From NCBI GenBank assembly GCA_907165135.1, contig OU015568.1, positions 6,510,001 through 6,574,000 of the forward strand: a stretch of 64,000 bases of DNA. The letters run 5' to 3'. Made by a program: the position numbers and the translations under genes. Positions within the stretch are counted from its first letter, which is position 1, and every line of letters begins with the position of its first letter. The stretch comes from Oikopleura dioica. Lineage: Eukaryota; Animalia; Chordata. The notes under the pieces were generated by a model, which saw only the letters and a program-made list of their open reading frames with translations, was not told the DNA's origin and searched no databases. Below are positions 26,130-31,214 of the stretch, piece by piece.

Positions 26130-28203
26130 AAAAGAGATCTTGCTAAAAGAAGACCAGAATGGATCAACAACAATATCCACAACCACCGCCGCCTCAACAG
26201 GTTCAAGGGCAACAGGAGGCTCAGCAGGAGATCCTAGAGCCGTATGTTTCAGAAGACAAGAGATGCATGTCGAACTCGTGGAATCAGCCACCAGGAAAGA
26301 TTGAAAAGACATCGAACGTCAATGCTCTTTCTGCTAGTTAATTTTTTATCGAATAACAATGAACTGTTTTGCCAGACTTTCCGGACAAGGGCAATTCATT
26401 CTCAAGTTCATTAAAAACAGTTCATGCGCTTTTAATTAAATGCACCAGAATCTGCTCGAGGTAAAGATTACCAGTAAGTTCAGCTCGAAGAAATTTCTAC
26501 AGAAGTAGCCCGACAAATAATTCTAACAAATGCTTTAACACATGCGAAACTTTAAGCCAGTCGATGTATTATTCAGCCAATCGAGTCAGATAATCTCGAG
26601 CTACACATGGAGAGAGATGCATTTTATTAATCTCTCATCTCATCCTTTTGTCCCGACATTCTCAAGAAGATAGTAATGCAGATTGCATGAAAAATAAACT
26701 CTTGATCCTTGTCATCCGATGATATAAACTTAAAAATTAACCATGCCGCCACTTTCCCTTAGTTCTGTCAATTGAGGACCTACATGCGTTTCAATCACTA
26801 AATACAGGGCCAACAACTGGAGAGCTCTGCCCAAAGTACGCGTGCTATGGATGCTGCAATGAAAAGGAAGCTCTGAAGCATTTTGCATCTGGAGATGCTT
26901 ATGGGCATTACGGACCGTATCAGTTTTCTGGATGCTCAAGTACTGGACAGGAACGAGCCAAAATGAGCGAAAAAGAAATTTTATGAACATGAACTTGAGC
27001 TTGAAAATAGGTCGACAGAACCAACTCCGGAGGACTCAGTGAACAGTGCCATACATTCATCCAAAACAACCACTGTCTTTCAGCCTGTAGGTAAGAGAAA
27101 GACCTTCAATAATTAAGAAATTAAATCAATTCAAAATATCAATTCAATCAATAGCCCCAACGTTTATCTTTGGTTTGCATCGACAGGAAACTCGCGCCAC
27201 GATGACCATCTTCATGGGATGAAGGCTTGCACGAATTTTTGCAGCGACTTTTACAATTCTTGCAAGAATGAATACATTTGCTACAACAAAGAAGGCCTTT
27301 CGGAGTATTTCATGGACTTTTTGGCCGGAAATCTTTCTGAAGAAAAGGACTACAAGATCTTCCACTGCGAAGGGAACTACGAGTGCCAGAAGATTCAAGA
27401 TAGCTTGATTGCCAAGCCACTAGGTACAGTAAATTCTAAAAGAACTGAGTCCCAAATCGGAACATCTGCTGACAATCTGTTTTAAGATCTGTCGCGTATG
27501 ACAAGCTTGGGCCTAAATATGAAGGCTGATACTCAGTCAAGGGATGAAATTGAAAATTTTTGCTCAAAGTTTTCATTTGGAATGTTTGAAATGCAAAAAG
27601 AATCAGGTAAGACAAAAGCATTGCCTTTGGAATGGGTTCAAAATCAACATCTTCCATTCTTAACGGATCATTTAGAATTGAATTTATGACGGAGGCAAAC
27701 AGGTTCAATTACTACTGTTTATTTCAGATCATGTTTGCATCGATCCCAGGGGAAAGTTCCATCATTAACGCTGTCAAAGCAAGGGAAGAAGTTTACAACG
27801 GGGCTTATCCAGCCGATAAAAGGTCAATAAGAAACACGGCCCAAGTTTTAATCAATCTTTAGATCATTCCCTGTAACTCAAGATTGTCCCACAGGACTCT
27901 CAAAAGGAGCAATAATTGGTATTTCTGTTGCCGTCACTGCTGGTGTTCTCCTTATTGCCATTTTGATACGGTTTTCAATCTTTTTCCATATCCATTTCAA
28001 GCAAAAAGCATCTGATTTAATGATTAATGTCACTCAGATTGAAAATCTGGAAGTAGGTATTCTTCTTATGCTGTAGGAAAAAGGATGATAAAGATGAAGA
28101 ATACACAATGGGGAACCAGTAAGATACAGAATAAGGTTCAAAGAAAGAAAGAACGAAATTCAGGACTGACTACGATCCGTCGACCAGAGCATCTCAAAGA
28201 TAG
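26130..28203 (+). CDS. Folate-receptor/riboflavin-binding-protein-fold type I membrane protein; 5' exons uncertain
   Basis: LCPKYACYGCCNEKEA, LSEQCHTFIQNNHCLSACSPNVYLW and KACTNFCSDFYNSCKNEYIC match the folate-receptor cysteine pattern. TM IIGISVAVTAGVLLIAILI, then a short cytoplasmic tail. Confidence 0.7.
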
Positions 28204-28477
28204 AAGAAAATTACAATGACATAGAACTGATTTGATTATTGAATAAAAAAACACGCCCCTGTCAATAATTCTCGTTGCGCATTATAGAATTGAAAATTTG
28301 ATTCAAATGAAAAATGACTCTACCTGTCTAAAAATCTACATTCGTCGGAAAAATCAGTTGACCTGGATAAAATCGATCATAATTAGACACTATTTTCTTT
28401 GTGACTAAACGGGAAAAGCTATATAATAAATAGCTGCTTCCGCTGCAATCACATTTTAGACTTTTCGAATTTTTAAA

Positions 28478-29507
28478 ATGGGTTTCTATTATCAATCTCC
28501 AAAGTGAGTCTATTTTTCACCTCCGAGAGCAAGTTTTAAGAGATACAATTCTAGCTTCAAGCAGGGCTTTTACTACGACGAAAAGCAGAAGCAGGGCTTC
28601 TACTACCAGAACGGATTCTACTACGATGGTTTTTACTATGACAACGGCAACCACGGCAAACCTGCTGATGGTTTCTACTACGACAACGGATTCTACTATG
28701 ATGGCTTTTACTACGACCAAAAGCAACAACAGCAGGGTAAGTCTTATGAAATCAAGGAAGAAAACATGATGAAATGACTAGGATTCTACTACGATGGATT
28801 CTATTACGACCAGCAGGACAAGTTCAACAAGGACAACAAGGACTACTGGTACAAGGGTGAAGGCAAGGAGCGCATGCTCGAAGCCATCAACGGCATCAGA
28901 ACCATGGTCGACCACTACGTCTTCCAGAACCAAGAAATCGTCCCTGGCAAGAAGGTAAGCCCCCTTCCTATTCTGATTCTCAACACTCCTCTCAGGCCGG
29001 TGACGCTATCAACTCCATCGTCGCCACTGAAGTTTGCCGACAAGTGATCAAGCACTTCACCAAGAACGTCAACCCCGACGAGTTCTTCGAAAACGGCGGC
29101 GACGAGGAAGGCCTTGCCGTTTTGATCGCCAACGAAGCCCAGCGAAACCTTTCTCCTGCTGTTGACTTCACCAAGGAATGGAGAGCGAAGGGATCTGAGG
29201 CTGAGGAAATCATGACTGAGGTAAAACAACATCCTCAATCTCTTCGACAATAGATTTCTAGGTCACCAAGGAGCTCGTGCCCTTCTGCGTCGTCTGGAAA
29301 TCCAAGCAGGAATTCACCTCTCCCAACGACGCTCAAGAGAACGCCCTTCAAACCCTCGTCGCCAAGCGTGCCGTCGCCGAGGCCAAGTACGCCTTCGCCA
29401 ACCAGACCGCTCCCGACATTTCCCCCAACGAGGCCGAAGCCGTTGCACAGTCCAAGAAAATCGCCGACGTCCTCGCTAAGAAGGCCATCGACGAAATTGG
29501 TGCTTAG
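28478..29507 (+). CDS. Uncharacterised protein of about 290 aa with ten GFYY(D/Q) repeats and a predicted helical C-terminal domain
   Basis: Five exons with GT-AG introns. MGFYYQSPKYNSSFKQGFYYDEKQKQGFYYQNGFYYDGFYYDNG... Strong C-ending codon bias, TATATAA near 28421, AATAAA after the stop. Confidence 0.85.
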
Positions 29508-29642
29508 AAATAAAGCCATCTTTTTTCATTCTGTTAATAAATATTTTTATTTGAAAACAAAAGTCTATGAGCAGTTACAAACATTTTTTCCCCATTTGCA
29601 AGACGACAAGGAGATTTTGTTTTTCATTTAAGAAATTTTGTC

Positions 29643-31214
29643 TTATAGACTTTGCTTCAAATCTTGAATTTTCATTTTCGCCGAATAATAATCTAAAAAA
29701 GCTTTCAAACAATCACTTCAAAAAACTTCTCGACCTTTATGGACAATGTGAAAAAACGGCAAAGCTTGAATTCTCGTGTACCATTTGTTCAATTTCTCAT
29801 TTTCTTCATATTTGAATTTTGGATGCAATTCCATCTGAATCAACAAACCGTAAACGAGAAAGTCAACCCAGGTCATATTTGCGCCGGTGAGATATTCGTT
29901 CTCGCCGAGAAGTTCGGTGAAATAGCTGTATCCCGCGATCTTTGCGTTTTCAATTGTTTCTTCTTCAACATTTTCGGGTTGGCCCATGAAGGTGGGGATG
30001 ACTAGCTGGCTGACGAAAGGCACAAGGGTTTCGTAGACGTATTTGACAATTGCATCGACTTTAATTGCTTCTGCTCCGTCAGGGTTCATGGCTAAAGGAT
30101 GAGCAAATGAACGACTAACAGATTGAGCGATTCTTACATTTCTGTTGTCCAAAATTGTCAATTAGATATTTTGAAATCTCCACTGATTCAGTAAACGTCA
30201 TGTTTCCATGAACCAGTTCGTTCTAGCTGTTTTCGGAGTGACAAACGGGTTCACAGGCAGCTGAAAAGTTAGATTTTGATTTTTTTGAGAAAATGGAGAA
30301 GAAAAAGGAAGAAAAATCGTATAGAAAAATATTGAAAATGACAGCGATTCCACCACCTTCTGAGAAAGAATTTTCAGGAGAGTTTTATAAAAAGTTCAGT
30401 TTTAAAAAGCATGAGCGTGCGCCATTATCTCAGTGGGTGCTGTCTCACGGCCACGCGTGGAAATGAGTAGCCAATCATATGCCCGGATCCATGATTTCAC
30501 TCAATCACAGACAGGCAAAAGCGTAGGCAAAATCGACCACCCTGTTAACGGGTTAACACAAAAATTCCCGGAAGAAGCTGATTTATGTTTGCTACAGCCA
30601 ATTATCTTGAATAAATGGGTCAAAAATGGCTTTTGTCAATGAATTTTTATAAAACATGTAAGAAAAAATTGGTGGTACTGTCGTACTTTTTACCTTCCAG
30701 GATCACTAACTGTAGATTCAAAATCAAAAGAGGCGATTTTCTGGAAATTAGATTTTCTGGCATATTATATTTTCTGGCAGTGCCAGAAAATCGCCTTTGC
30801 CAGAAAGTCTAACTGCCAGAAAGTCTAACTGCCAGAAAATCGCCTCTCTCGGACGGGAACAGTATGCTTCGGGTTTATTTTCAAAAACCATTCTTCCATT
30901 TGCTCTTGTTTTTCCAAGTCAATTTGGACGAATTCAATGCTGAGATTCTCGCACATTTTCGCGACCATGATCGTAGTTCTTGCAAAAGCGGATAGTCCAC
31001 TTACATACATTTTCATTTCCGCTTCTTTTTTCGTTTCTTCATTAGTAGTATCTTGCCCAGATAAGGAACTGTCGCTTGACTGCGATGCTGCTTCATTTTT
31101 TAATTGAGAATTTTCAAAATTTTTTTCTTGTTCTGAATCTTTTTCCAAGTCTTTATTCTCTGGCGCGTCAAGTTTGGCTACGTCACTTGTCGACTTTGAA
31201 TTATTGCACCCCAT
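29643..31214 (-). CDS. Glutathione S-transferase (Ser-type, theta/delta-like) with an N-terminal MGC acylation motif
   Basis: MGCNNSKS...MYVSGLSAFART...INPKHTVP / LVHGNMTFTESVEISKYL / YLTGANMTWVDFLVY. The roughly 600-bp first intron contains repeats. Confidence 0.85.
30452..30552 (-). mobile_element. Truncated second copy of the piggyBac-like MITE at 19925-20056
   Basis: cacgcgtggaaatgagtagccaatc...gcgtaggcaaaatcgaccaccctgttaacggg|ttaa aligns with the reverse complement of 19925-20030. Confidence 0.8.
30731..30845. repeat. Foldback element built from tgccagaaa subrepeats
   Basis: Ends aggcgattttctgg / ccagaaaatcgcct form a perfect 14-bp inverted repeat. Tandem tttctggca units sit on the left and tgccagaaa units on the right. 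Confidence 0.75.

What the first reader, a model, noticed from the sequence alone, without database searches (positions are those of the whole stretch)
28478..29507. Orphan protein with ten GFYY repeats, probably highly expressed
Seen: about the first 85 residues contain GFYY ten times with D, Q, N and K spacers, spread over three exons. A roughly 200-aa Ala/Glu/Lys-rich domain that I do not recognise follows. There is no signal peptide or TM segment. Codon usage is strongly biased (ttc, tac, gcc, aag) compared with neighbours, and the gene has its own TATA box. Established: Gly-aromatic repeat domains drive phase separation, amyloid or cross-linked biomaterials (FG and SYG repeats, reflectins, Tyr-rich adhesives). 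Inference: an abundant self-assembling intracellular protein of a possibly undescribed family.
Basis: partly seen in the sequence, partly recalled or inferred. Interest (0 to 1): 0.75.

Follow-up and report, generated by a model that had tools for sequence, protein, structure and literature searches.

The report
Oikopleura GFYY-repeat protein family
A real, probably strongly expressed gene of the planktonic tunicate Oikopleura dioica encodes a 283-residue protein with ten invariant Gly-Phe-Tyr-Tyr motifs and a duplicated helical domain. It is not a lone orphan but one of at least seven GFYY genes in this genome and part of a large, unnamed family seen in ocean plankton transcripts, and its function is still unknown.

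Summary
A five-exon gene at 28478-29507 (+) encodes 283 residues with ten GFYY motifs at residues 2-78. It has no signal peptide or membrane segment, a TATA box and strong C-ending codon bias. A natural full-length cDNA from a sister O. dioica lineage matches all five exons end to end and starts 27 nt after the TATA box.

"Orphan" is only partly right. This genome has a paralogue with the same architecture, two short forms with one helical unit, two GFYY-only genes and a GFYY gene with a proline-rich tail. The scan had already noted two of these on other DNA. More than 150 relatives occur in Tara Oceans, JGI and Logan transcript sets. The only named ones are "uncharacterized" O. dioica proteins.

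GFYY is almost invariant (1533 of 1538 motif instances), while spacing (5-11 residues) and copy number (3-22) vary. The C-terminal part is an internal duplication of a roughly 95-residue three-helix unit, with no Pfam, PDB or fold match. Some relatives pass the Pfam OCRE threshold; this protein does not.

The most likely role is a multivalent aromatic assembly module on a new helical domain, but that role is inferred, not shown. The joined spliced model was never searched or folded; the cDNA-derived orthologue P0070 stood in for it.

The parts
28377..28396 (+). 20-nt upstream block containing TAATTA, identical in the sister-lineage orthologue; candidate regulatory site
   Evidence: The alignment of the 120 nt upstream of the ATG with L007 keeps this block intact, although synonymous divergence (dS) is about 0.9 and the introns are only about 57-75% identical (motif positions).
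28420..28426 (+). TATA box (TATATAA)
   Evidence: It is conserved in L007 and lies 27 nt upstream of the mapped cDNA 5' end.
28437..28443 (+). CTTCCGC, an ETS-like core just upstream of the transcription start
   Evidence: It is conserved in L007, and similar CTTCCG(C/G) or CGGAA cores lie upstream of the other GFYY genes. Any function is an inference.
28447..28447 (+). Inferred transcription start; the mRNA carries no spliced leader
   Evidence: cDNA L019 begins with a template-switch oligo. The next 16 bases match window 28447 onward exactly.
28478..28503 (+). Exon 1 (ATG and first GFYY)
   Evidence: cDNA 57-82.
28555..28736 (+). Exon 2 (seven GFYY and the Gly codon start of the ninth)
   Evidence: cDNA 83-264. 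Against L007, pN is 0.026 and pS 0.69.
28782..28954 (+). Exon 3 (last two GFYY, the conserved DKFNKDNKDYW linker at 28817-28849, and the first helix of unit 1)
   Evidence: cDNA 265-437. The linker residues are nearly invariant in the 56-sequence alignment.
28996..29220 (+). Exon 4 (rest of helical unit 1 and start of unit 2)
   Evidence: cDNA 438-662. The 75 residues are identical to L007 despite 30 synonymous differences.
29262..29507 (+). Exon 5 (helical unit 2 and the TAG stop)
   Evidence: cDNA 663-908.
28481..28807 (+). GFYY array, residues 2-78 (interrupted by introns 1 and 2)
   Evidence: AF2 gives pLDDT below 50 for residues 1-80 of the orthologue.
28835..29166 (+). Helical unit 1, about residues 88-184 (includes intron 3)
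   Evidence: AF2 predicts helices 97-118, 126-151 and 164-179. hhalign of unit 1 against unit 2 gives probability 91% and E 1e-6 over 83 columns.
29167..29504 (+). Helical unit 2, residues 185-283 (includes intron 4)
   Evidence: AF2 predicts helices 195-216, 225-250 and 259-282. The internal duplication rests.
29509..29541 (+). Two AATAAA signals (29509-29514 and 29536-29541); the poly(A) site is expected near 29555-29560
   Evidence: Sequence. cDNA L019 carries a poly(A) tail about 22 nt after the second signal of its own lineage.

Best explanation
This is a genuine gene of Oikopleura dioica, probably abundantly expressed, for an acidic protein predicted to stay inside the cell. It is the 'long' form of a family found so far only in larvacean-like sequences.

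The family is defined by an N-terminal array that starts at residue 2 and consists of invariant GFYY tetrapeptides. These are separated by polar Q/N/D/E/K/P spacers of variable length. A conserved DKFNK-NKDYW linker joins the array to one or two copies of a three-helix unit of about 95 residues.

Proposed mechanism (inferred). The GFYY array acts as a multivalent aromatic 'sticker' module that is flexible or only weakly structured. It lets the protein associate with itself and with the other GFYY proteins of the cell (the GFYY-only forms, the form with a proline-rich tail and the short forms), building a dense protein phase or gel. The duplicated helical domain would add a folded second interaction or oligomerisation surface that sets each paralogue apart.

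Shown here: the gene model, the transcript, purifying selection, the family, the motif invariance and the internal duplication. Inferred: abundance, location and assembly.
For: - Gene and transcript. The five exons match a natural cDNA as abutting blocks, with a start site 27 nt after the TATA box and a poly(A) tail.
- Selection. Against the sister-lineage locus L007, pN is 0.006-0.048 and pS 0.40-0.69 in exons 2-5, giving an overall dN/dS of about 0.05. The repeat exon is included.
- Expression proxy. Nc is 36.6 and the codon profile matches the most biased actin gene. Seven full-length 283-aa transcripts from JGI and Logan sit in the same 90% cluster.
- Modularity. The same MGFYY array is joined to different C-termini in this genome: long B, short forms, a proline-rich tail, or nothing.
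- Sticker-and-spacer pattern. Across 168 proteins there are 1533 GFYY against 5 variants. Start-to-start spacing is spread over 5-11 residues, copy number runs from 3 to 22, and the spacers are mostly Q, N, E, P, D and K.
- Disorder. AF2 gives pLDDT below 50 for residues 1-80 but confident helices after residue 86.
- Not secreted. There is no hydrophobic stretch.
Against: - Nothing here measures expression level, location or assembly.
- A strictly invariant tetrapeptide suggests specific recognition rather than generic aromatic stickiness.
- Some relatives pass the Pfam OCRE cut-off, so the array could be a folded beta platform.
- Low AF2 confidence does not prove disorder.
- The helical domain has low pTM (0.29 and 0.37), so its packing and any oligomer state are unknown.
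- Many house proteins of this animal lack classical signal peptides (PMC3390340), so an extracellular fate is not excluded.
Confidence: 0.4

Rival explanations
1. The GFYY array is an OCRE-type tyrosine-rich beta-sheet platform. Like the RBM5 OCRE domain, it would bind proline-rich ligands, for example the proline-rich tail of the GFYY gene on contig 5.
For: - Pfam OCRE (PF17780, cut-off 24.7 bits) is passed by relatives P0110 (44.2 bits), P0097 (27.9) and P0109 (27.5).
- 13 of 56 long-form members match OCRE at E <= 0.01.
- The Norwegian copy of paralogue long B reaches 20.2 bits.
- The two best PDB hits of the family profile are the RBM10 and RBM5 OCRE domains (E 0.13 and 0.26). P0110 alone hits RBM10 OCRE at E 0.0086.
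- RBM5 OCRE is a beta-sheet that binds poly-proline motifs through conserved aromatic residues (PMC5127646).
- A GFYY gene of this genome carries a proline-rich tail.
Against: - This protein's exons and its orthologue P0070 give no OCRE hit even at E 10.
- Its motif spacing is 5-14 residues, not 8, and spacing across the family is spread over 5-11.
- Copy number ranges from 3 to 22, whereas OCRE is one compact domain of about 52 positions.
- AF2 predicts no confident beta structure.
- None of the 56 long-form members scanned has an RNA-binding or any other Pfam domain at E <= 0.01.
- The match may reflect only the shared G-aromatic-Y-Y-D word.
Confidence: 0.2
2. GFYY is a repeated short linear motif read by a dedicated folded receptor, possibly the family's own helical unit. 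The array would then be a multivalent ligand, in the manner of GW or FG repeat arrays.
For: The motif is almost perfectly invariant (1533 of 1538) while spacing and copy number are free. All four replacements between the window protein and L007 in the array region fall in spacers. The motif and the helical unit occur together in both the long and the short forms.
Against: No receptor has been identified. The GFYY-only genes and the proline-tailed gene lack the helical unit. At least one environmental relative seems to carry the helical units without GFYY in the same open frame. Nothing was tested by docking, because the joined model could not be used.
Confidence: 0.15
3. The protein leaves the cell by a non-classical route and serves as a tyrosine-rich, enzymatically cross-linked structural material, for example in the house, the egg envelope or the cuticle.
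For: Tyr makes up 21 of the first 92 residues. Only 18 of 80 house proteins score strong SignalP predictions, and a peroxidase-domain protein is among them (PMC3390340).
Against: The protein lacks the M(K/R)(I/L/F) start typical of oikosins and has no hydrophobic segment. No GFYY or FYYD string was found in that paper's held supplements; this is weak evidence, because full sequences may not be included there.
Confidence: 0.1
4. The repeats are a chance or neutral low-complexity expansion in a mis-predicted or non-functional gene.
For: The public annotation of this assembly does not list the gene on its own but fuses it to the upstream gene.
Against: A natural cDNA is collinear with the model, dN/dS is about 0.05 including the repeat exon, all ten repeats are conserved in the sister lineage, and the motif is shared by at least 168 proteins.
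Confidence: 0.01

Closest known systems
OCRE domain (Pfam PF17780) of RBM5, RBM6 and RBM10
   Same: Both have repeated G-aromatic-Y-Y-D words. Several family members pass the Pfam cut-off, and the OCRE chains are the best, though weak, PDB sequence hits.
   Different: This protein and its orthologue do not hit the model. Motif spacing is irregular and the arrays are up to four times longer. No beta fold is predicted. There is no RNA-binding context, and the array is fused to a novel helical domain.
Aromatic 'sticker and spacer' low-complexity domains such as the FUS-type [G/S]Y[G/S] prion-like domains (from my own knowledge, not tested here)
   Same: Aromatic residues are spaced by polar Q/N-rich spacers, copy number is variable, and structure prediction confidence is low.
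   Different: The sticker is a fixed four-residue word with three consecutive aromatics. Aromatic residues make up 37% of the first 92 residues, which by my recollection is far above FUS-type domains. The array is net acidic and has no RNA-binding partner domain.
High glycine-tyrosine keratin-associated proteins and other Gly/Tyr-rich matrix proteins (from my own knowledge, not tested here)
   Same: These are small, abundant, Gly/Tyr/Phe-rich proteins made without a signal peptide that act as an intracellular matrix.
   Different: There is no sequence relation, no Cys-rich context and no known filament partner in this animal. Here the repeats are joined to a folded helical domain.
Uncharacterized O. 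dioica proteins CBY09694.1 (E4XG96), CAG5082781.1 and CBY06764.1 (E4WSW1)
   Same: CBY09694.1 (E4XG96) and CAG5082781.1 are database copies of this gene from two O. dioica lineages, and CBY06764.1 (E4WSW1) is a copy of its long paralogue. CBY09694.1 and CAG5082781.1 share P0070's 90% cluster, and CBY06764.1 sits in the paralogue's cluster.
   Different: None is named or described. CAG5082781.1 is a 576-aa model fused to the upstream folate-receptor-like gene, and CBY09694.1 lacks 12 residues (two repeats).

Membership tests
OCRE domain (PF17780) | Scores above the Pfam gathering cut-off (24.7 bits) | tested here: not met
   There was no hit at E <= 10 for exons 2 and 3 or for the orthologue P0070. 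Relatives P0110, P0097 and P0109 do pass.
OCRE domain (PF17780) | Aromatic repeats with an eight-residue period in one compact unit of about 52 positions | tested here: not met
   Spacing in the window protein is 11, 10, 6, 5, 14, 6, 5, 11 and 5 residues. Across the family it is spread over 5-11, with 3-22 copies.
OCRE domain (PF17780) | Antiparallel beta-sheet fold | tested here: inconclusive
   AF2 gives pLDDT below 50 for residues 1-80, with only isolated bridge residues.
OCRE domain (PF17780) | Binds proline-rich motifs through conserved tyrosines (PMC5127646) | not testable with these tools
   This needs binding assays. A proline-rich tail exists in the GFYY gene on contig 5.
Unnamed GFYY family, long form | The array starts at residue 2 (MGFYY) and has at least three GFYY | tested here: met
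   The window protein has ten GFYY from residue 2. MGFYY lies within the first 25 residues in 150 of 168 family proteins.
Unnamed GFYY family, long form | Conserved DKFNK-NKDYW linker followed by two homologous three-helix units | tested here: met
   D82, N85, K89, Y91 and W92 are nearly invariant. The exon pieces align at 35-78% identity with the long-form relatives listed. The two units are related at hhalign probability 91% and E 1e-6.
Oikosins (house proteins of Oikopleura) | Signal peptide or the M(K/R)(I/L/F) start, and detection in the house proteome | tested here: not met
   The protein starts MGF and has no hydrophobic N-terminus. No GFYY or FYYD string was found in the held supplements of PMC3390340 (a weak test).
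Aromatic sticker-spacer low-complexity domains | Aromatic residues spread among polar, low-complexity spacers, with predicted lack of fixed structure | tested here: met
   For composition and spacing; for low pLDDT. This is a resemblance in kind, not homology.
Aromatic sticker-spacer low-complexity domains | Concentration-dependent phase separation or gelation that depends on the aromatic residues | not testable with these tools
   This needs recombinant protein and Tyr-to-Ser variants.
N-myristoylated proteins | Gly2 followed by a permitted small, uncharged residue and Ser/Thr-type residue at position 6 (PROSITE PS00008 rule, from memory) | tested here: not met
   The sequence starts M-G-F-Y-Y-Q-S. 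Phe after the Gly and Gln at the fifth position after it both break the rule as I recall it.

The most novel reading that the evidence does not exclude
The GFYY tetrapeptide array could be a previously undescribed, larvacean-specific assembly system. A small toolkit of co-expressed proteins would build an abundant cellular or secreted material that matters for larvacean biology. The toolkit would comprise the GFYY-only forms, the form with a proline-rich tail, and the forms with one or two copies of a new three-helix unit. GFYY would act as a new kind of specific multivalent sticker or ligand motif.
Probability: 0.3. Interest if true: 0.75.

Novelty: new variant of a known kind. Interest (0 to 1): 0.55.

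Why it matters
Larvaceans are among the most abundant zooplankton and are central to carbon export in the ocean. This family is visible as more than 150 distinct sequences in Tara Oceans, JGI and Logan transcript sets, yet it has no name, no Pfam model, no structure and no paper.

The arrays have three consecutive aromatic residues in a strictly fixed word, with free spacing and free copy number. That makes them a clean natural test case for two questions. Does assembly driven by aromatic repeats need specific motifs or only composition? How far does the OCRE-type tyrosine platform extend?

The helical unit may be a new fold. In practical terms, the public annotation of this assembly hides the gene inside a fused model, so proteome-based studies would miss it.

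Tried and rejected
- Pfam scans of the four exon pieces gave only a sub-threshold PP-binding hit (E 0.056), which I treated as noise.
- Pfam scans of full-length relatives gave only OCRE and scattered noise such as Vel1p, DUF659, RTTN_N and VSG_B.
- PDB sequence searches with exon profiles gave noise. The 'Cake' designer repeat proteins hit one 17-residue stretch repeatedly, which is an artefact. Searches with P0070 and with the family profile found nothing significant.
- Two AF2 models were searched with Foldseek (best E 2.2 and 3.0) and with VIA-align against 48,161 chains. The best Z was 6.0 and 5.8, from helical hairpins only, below the level that means anything for helical proteins.
- The ESM Atlas gave no usable hit for the whole protein or for residues 86-283.
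- Literature searches for GFYY alone, GFYY with Oikopleura, 'tyrosine-rich' with Oikopleura, and the run accession of the cDNA found nothing relevant.
- The house proteome paper holds no GFYY or FYYD string in its supplements.
- N-myristoylation at Gly2 was considered and rejected on the PROSITE rule, recalled from memory.
- The first codon-usage controls were poor. The longest open frame of L011 was in the wrong frame, and L025 is not EF-1 alpha. I rely only on the actin match regions.
- In one search my exon 1 coordinates for L007 were off by one, so the exon 1 row and the pooled figures there are slightly distorted. Exons 2-5 are correct.
- The origin of the environmental relatives could not be settled. 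A neighbouring gene on scaffold L033 has a 32-44% identical relative in this genome. This fits another larvacean but does not prove it.
Full report
WHAT IS IN THE SEQUENCE

The region holds a compact five-exon gene on the + strand. The exons are 28478-28503, 28555-28736, 28782-28954, 28996-29220 and 29262-29507. The four GT..AG introns are 51, 45, 41 and 41 nt long, and the CDS of 852 nt encodes 283 residues.

GFYY occurs ten times, starting at residues 2, 13, 23, 29, 34, 48, 54, 59, 70 and 75. The motifs lie in exons 1-3, and the ninth is split by intron 2. Shuffling the first 92 residues gives 0.08 copies on average and never more than 2. All ten GFYY words in the six frames of the whole window lie in this gene.

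The first 92 residues are Y 21, G 12, F 12, Q 12, D 12, K 8 and N 7. The remaining 191 are led by A 26, E 22, K 17 and V 17. The protein is acidic (44 D+E against 31 K+R). Its highest 19-residue hydropathy mean is 0.65, so there is no signal peptide or membrane segment.

HOW THE SPLICED MODEL WAS HANDLED

I did not hand the joined protein of this window to any search or folding tool. The joined CDS was put together only inside local scripts, to count motifs, residues and codons.

For every step that needs a full-length protein I used natural database proteins returned by the searches. The main one is P0070, the 283-aa product of a natural cDNA. It is 94-100% identical to the four in-frame exon pieces tested (exons 2-5) and collinear with them.

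THE GENE IS REAL AND TRANSCRIBED AS MODELLED

A word search with exon 5 found an 80-aa open frame on marine metagenome contigs. One of these contigs, L007, carries the whole orthologous gene with the same four intron positions.

The whole-library profile search with exon 5 and the follow-up word search led to P0070. It is encoded by L019, a 990-nt contig of the Logan assembly of run SRR28368985. The five exons of the window and of L007 map to L019 as abutting blocks 57-82, 83-264, 265-437, 438-662 and 663-908.

L019 begins with a template-switch oligo, and its next 16 bases match window 28447 onward exactly. It ends in a poly(A) tail about 22 nt after an AATAAA. The TATATAA box at 28420 is therefore 27 nt upstream of the start site. 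The mRNA begins with genomic sequence and carries no spliced leader.

SELECTION

Against L007, exons 2-5 show these values:

| Exon | pN | pS |
|---|---|---|
| 2 | 0.026 | 0.69 |
| 3 | 0.021 | 0.42 |
| 4 | 0.006 | 0.61 |
| 5 | 0.048 | 0.40 |

Overall dN/dS is about 0.05. My exon 1 coordinates in that call were off by one and should be ignored. Exon 4 is identical at the protein level over 75 residues despite 30 synonymous changes. The introns are only about 57-75% identical. All ten repeats and their spacing are kept, and the four replacements in the array region all fall in spacers.

EXPRESSION PROXIES

Codon usage is strongly biased. Nc is 36.6 against 57.4 for 29 long open frames of the window. 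C at third positions is 52% against 25%, and AAC is used 19/19 times, AAG 22/25 and GCC 17/27. The neighbouring GST-like frame and the long ATR-like exon show no such bias.

The most biased actin gene of the genome (L011 match region) has the same profile: C3 56%, AAG 19/19, AAC 10/10, GCC 20 and GCT 10 with no GCA or GCG. Seven independent full-length 283-aa transcripts from JGI and Logan fall in the same 90% cluster. These are proxies for expression, not measurements.

ORGANISM AND PUBLIC ANNOTATION

The genome has 64.3 Mb in 19 contigs. Its contig 4 is 14,533,022 bases long. That equals the contig length on record for Oikopleura dioica OKI2018_I69 chr1, which encodes P0114.

The 90% cluster of P0070 contains CBY09694.1 (E4XG96_OIKDI, 271 aa, 'uncharacterized') and CAG5082781.1 (OKI2018_I69.PAR.g10206, 576 aa). 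From FKQGFYY onward, CAG5082781.1 reads like my translations of exons 2-5 (read by eye). Its N-terminal 300 residues are a folate-receptor-family protein with a membrane segment.

That upstream gene can end naturally at a TAG at 28074-28076. The fusion needs a weak GTTTTC donor and a 584-nt intron. Together with the cDNA start at 28447, this makes the fused model probably an annotation artefact.

NOT AN ORPHAN: THE FAMILY IN THIS GENOME

Exon-wise searches of the genome found a paralogue at C4:3048964-3049900 (-). It has 255 residues, five GFYY plus one degenerate copy, the same linker and both helical units, but different intron positions.

Other members of the family in this genome:
- Short A lies head to head with that paralogue, about 310 nt away, at C4:3050279-3050930 (+). 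It has GFYY repeats and one helical unit, and is P0114 in the public annotation.
- A second short form lies at C4:2666541-2667016.
- A gene at C5:13353628-13353885 (-) has 11 GFYY, a proline/alanine-rich tail and an acidic Tyr-rich end.
- A three-exon gene at C4:9719388-9719964 (-) is made only of GFYY repeats.
- An intronless 112-aa GFYY-only gene lies at C4:13230905-13231243 (-).

The scan had already noted the contig 5 gene and a GFYY-only gene on other DNA (s1-367584 and s1-336656). I read both kinds of gene myself. A family-profile search of the genome finds the long C-terminal domain only at the window locus and at C4:3049xxx.

THE FAMILY ELSEWHERE

The exon 5 profile found 15 proteins at E <= 0.001 among 1.84 billion representatives. 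A word search with full-length relative P0003 found 88 clusters. They come from Tara Oceans metatranscriptome sets (accessions of the ERR17 series), JGI and Logan, and none carries a name.

The only named members are O. dioica 'uncharacterized' or 'unnamed' proteins. A Tara metagenome scaffold (L033) holds two family genes in tandem. It also holds a secreted Thr-rich gene whose relative in this genome is 32-44% identical. This fits another larvacean but does not prove it.

ANATOMY OF THE ARRAY

Over 168 retrieved proteins with at least three copies, one search gives these figures:
- There are 1533 GFYY against five single variants (GSEY, GFFY, GFCY, GFNY, GFHY).
- The residue after the motif is D, N, E or Q.
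- Start-to-start spacing is spread over 5 to 11 residues, with counts of 197, 168, 96, 247, 244, 216 and 184.
- Copy number is 3-22, with a median of 9.
- Spacers are mostly Q, N, E, P, D and K.
- MGFYY lies within the first 25 residues in 150 of the 168 proteins.

AF2 on P0070, with a 56-sequence alignment, gives pLDDT below 50 for residues 1-80.

RELATION TO OCRE

Relatives P0110 (44.2 bits), P0097 (27.9) and P0109 (27.5) pass the Pfam OCRE cut-off of 24.7 bits. 13 of 56 long-form members match at E <= 0.01. The Norwegian copy of long B reaches 20.2 bits.

The best PDB sequence hits of the family profile are the RBM10 and RBM5 OCRE chains, at non-significant E of 0.13 and 0.26. P0110 alone reaches E 0.0086. 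The RBM5 OCRE domain is a beta-sheet that binds poly-proline motifs through conserved aromatic residues (PMC5127646).

This protein's exons and P0070 give no OCRE hit at all, and its spacing is not octameric. I therefore treat OCRE as the closest described relative in sequence pattern, not as the family this protein belongs to.

THE C-TERMINAL DOMAIN

AF2 predicts helices at 97-118, 126-151 and 164-179, and again at 195-216, 225-250 and 259-282. A second model of the domain alone (P0018 with 78 sequences) has mean pLDDT 78.7 but pTM 0.37. The helices are therefore confident but their packing is not.

hhalign of residues 88-184 against 185-283, cut from the family alignment, gives probability 91% and E 1e-6 over 83 columns. 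The domain is thus an internal duplication of a three-helix unit of about 95 residues that opens with a conserved Trp. By eye, the short forms carry one such unit.

Pfam, PDB sequence search, Foldseek, VIA-align (best Z 6.0 and 5.8, hairpins only) and the ESM Atlas find no relative.

MECHANISM

What is shown: the gene and its transcript, purifying selection, a modular family, an invariant motif with free spacing and number, and a duplicated helical domain.

What is inferred: the array is a multivalent aromatic module that makes these proteins associate with themselves and each other, with the helical units as a second, folded interaction surface (confidence 0.4).

The rivals are:
- an OCRE-like beta platform for proline-rich ligands (0.2);
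- a ligand array read by a dedicated receptor, perhaps the helical unit (0.15);
- an extracellular cross-linked material after non-classical secretion (0.1), which stays open because many house proteins lack classical signal peptides (PMC3390340);
- an artefact (0.01), refuted.

VERDICT

In kind it is a new variant of the aromatic-repeat proteins, joined to a helical unit that has no detectable relatives.

Noticed in passing
window 27400-28076 (+) and 28555 onward: The public model CAG5082781.1 (576 aa) fuses an upstream folate-receptor-family gene that has a membrane segment to exons 2-5 of the GFYY gene. The upstream frame has its own stop at 28074-28076, and the fusion needs a weak GTTTTC donor near 27970 and a 584-nt intron. 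It is probably an annotation artefact.
   Followed up: partly
window 28377-28396 and 28437-28443; upstream regions of L002, L014, L016, L020: A 20-nt block with TAATTA is identical between the window and the sister lineage. A CTTCCG(C/G) or CGGAA (ETS-like) core lies close to the start of most GFYY genes. This hints at shared regulation, but the chance level was not properly assessed.
   Followed up: partly
G000:C4:3048964-3050930 (L002, L020): The long paralogue (- strand) and a short-form GFYY gene (+ strand) sit head to head about 310 nt apart, which suggests a shared bidirectional promoter region.
   Followed up: partly
L002 compared with window 28478-29507: The two long paralogues have different intron positions in the helical domain. 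The window gene has an intron after ...MTE and none at ...LSP, while the paralogue has the reverse and an extra intron before EAAYAF. This looks like intron turnover between paralogues.
   Followed up: no
P0119 (CBY09694.1) compared with window 28737-28819: The Norwegian reference model lacks 12 residues (two GFYY repeats) at the start of exon 3. Canonical GT..AG sites do not give this junction in the window, so it is either a non-canonical splice model or a mis-annotation. Seven transcript-derived 283-aa proteins support the long isoform.
   Followed up: partly
L007 2997-3428 compared with window 29718-30161: The gene downstream differs between lineages. It is a GST-like gene on the minus strand in the window and what looks by eye like a DEAD-box helicase frame in L007, while the upstream folate-receptor-like gene is shared. 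This points to local gene-order change between O. dioica lineages.
   Followed up: no
L033 1369-2133 and 6263-7182: A Tara metagenome scaffold carries two family genes in tandem about 4 kb apart. The second shows the linker and both helical units but no GFYY in its open frame, so forms without repeats may exist.
   Followed up: no
G000:C4:13230905-13231243 (L036 506-844, - strand): An intronless 112-aa gene is made only of about 16 GFYY repeats with QQPRQ or QQPKQ spacers and ends in GFYY. It is a further member beside the three-exon GFYY-only gene at C4:9719388-9719964.
   Followed up: partly
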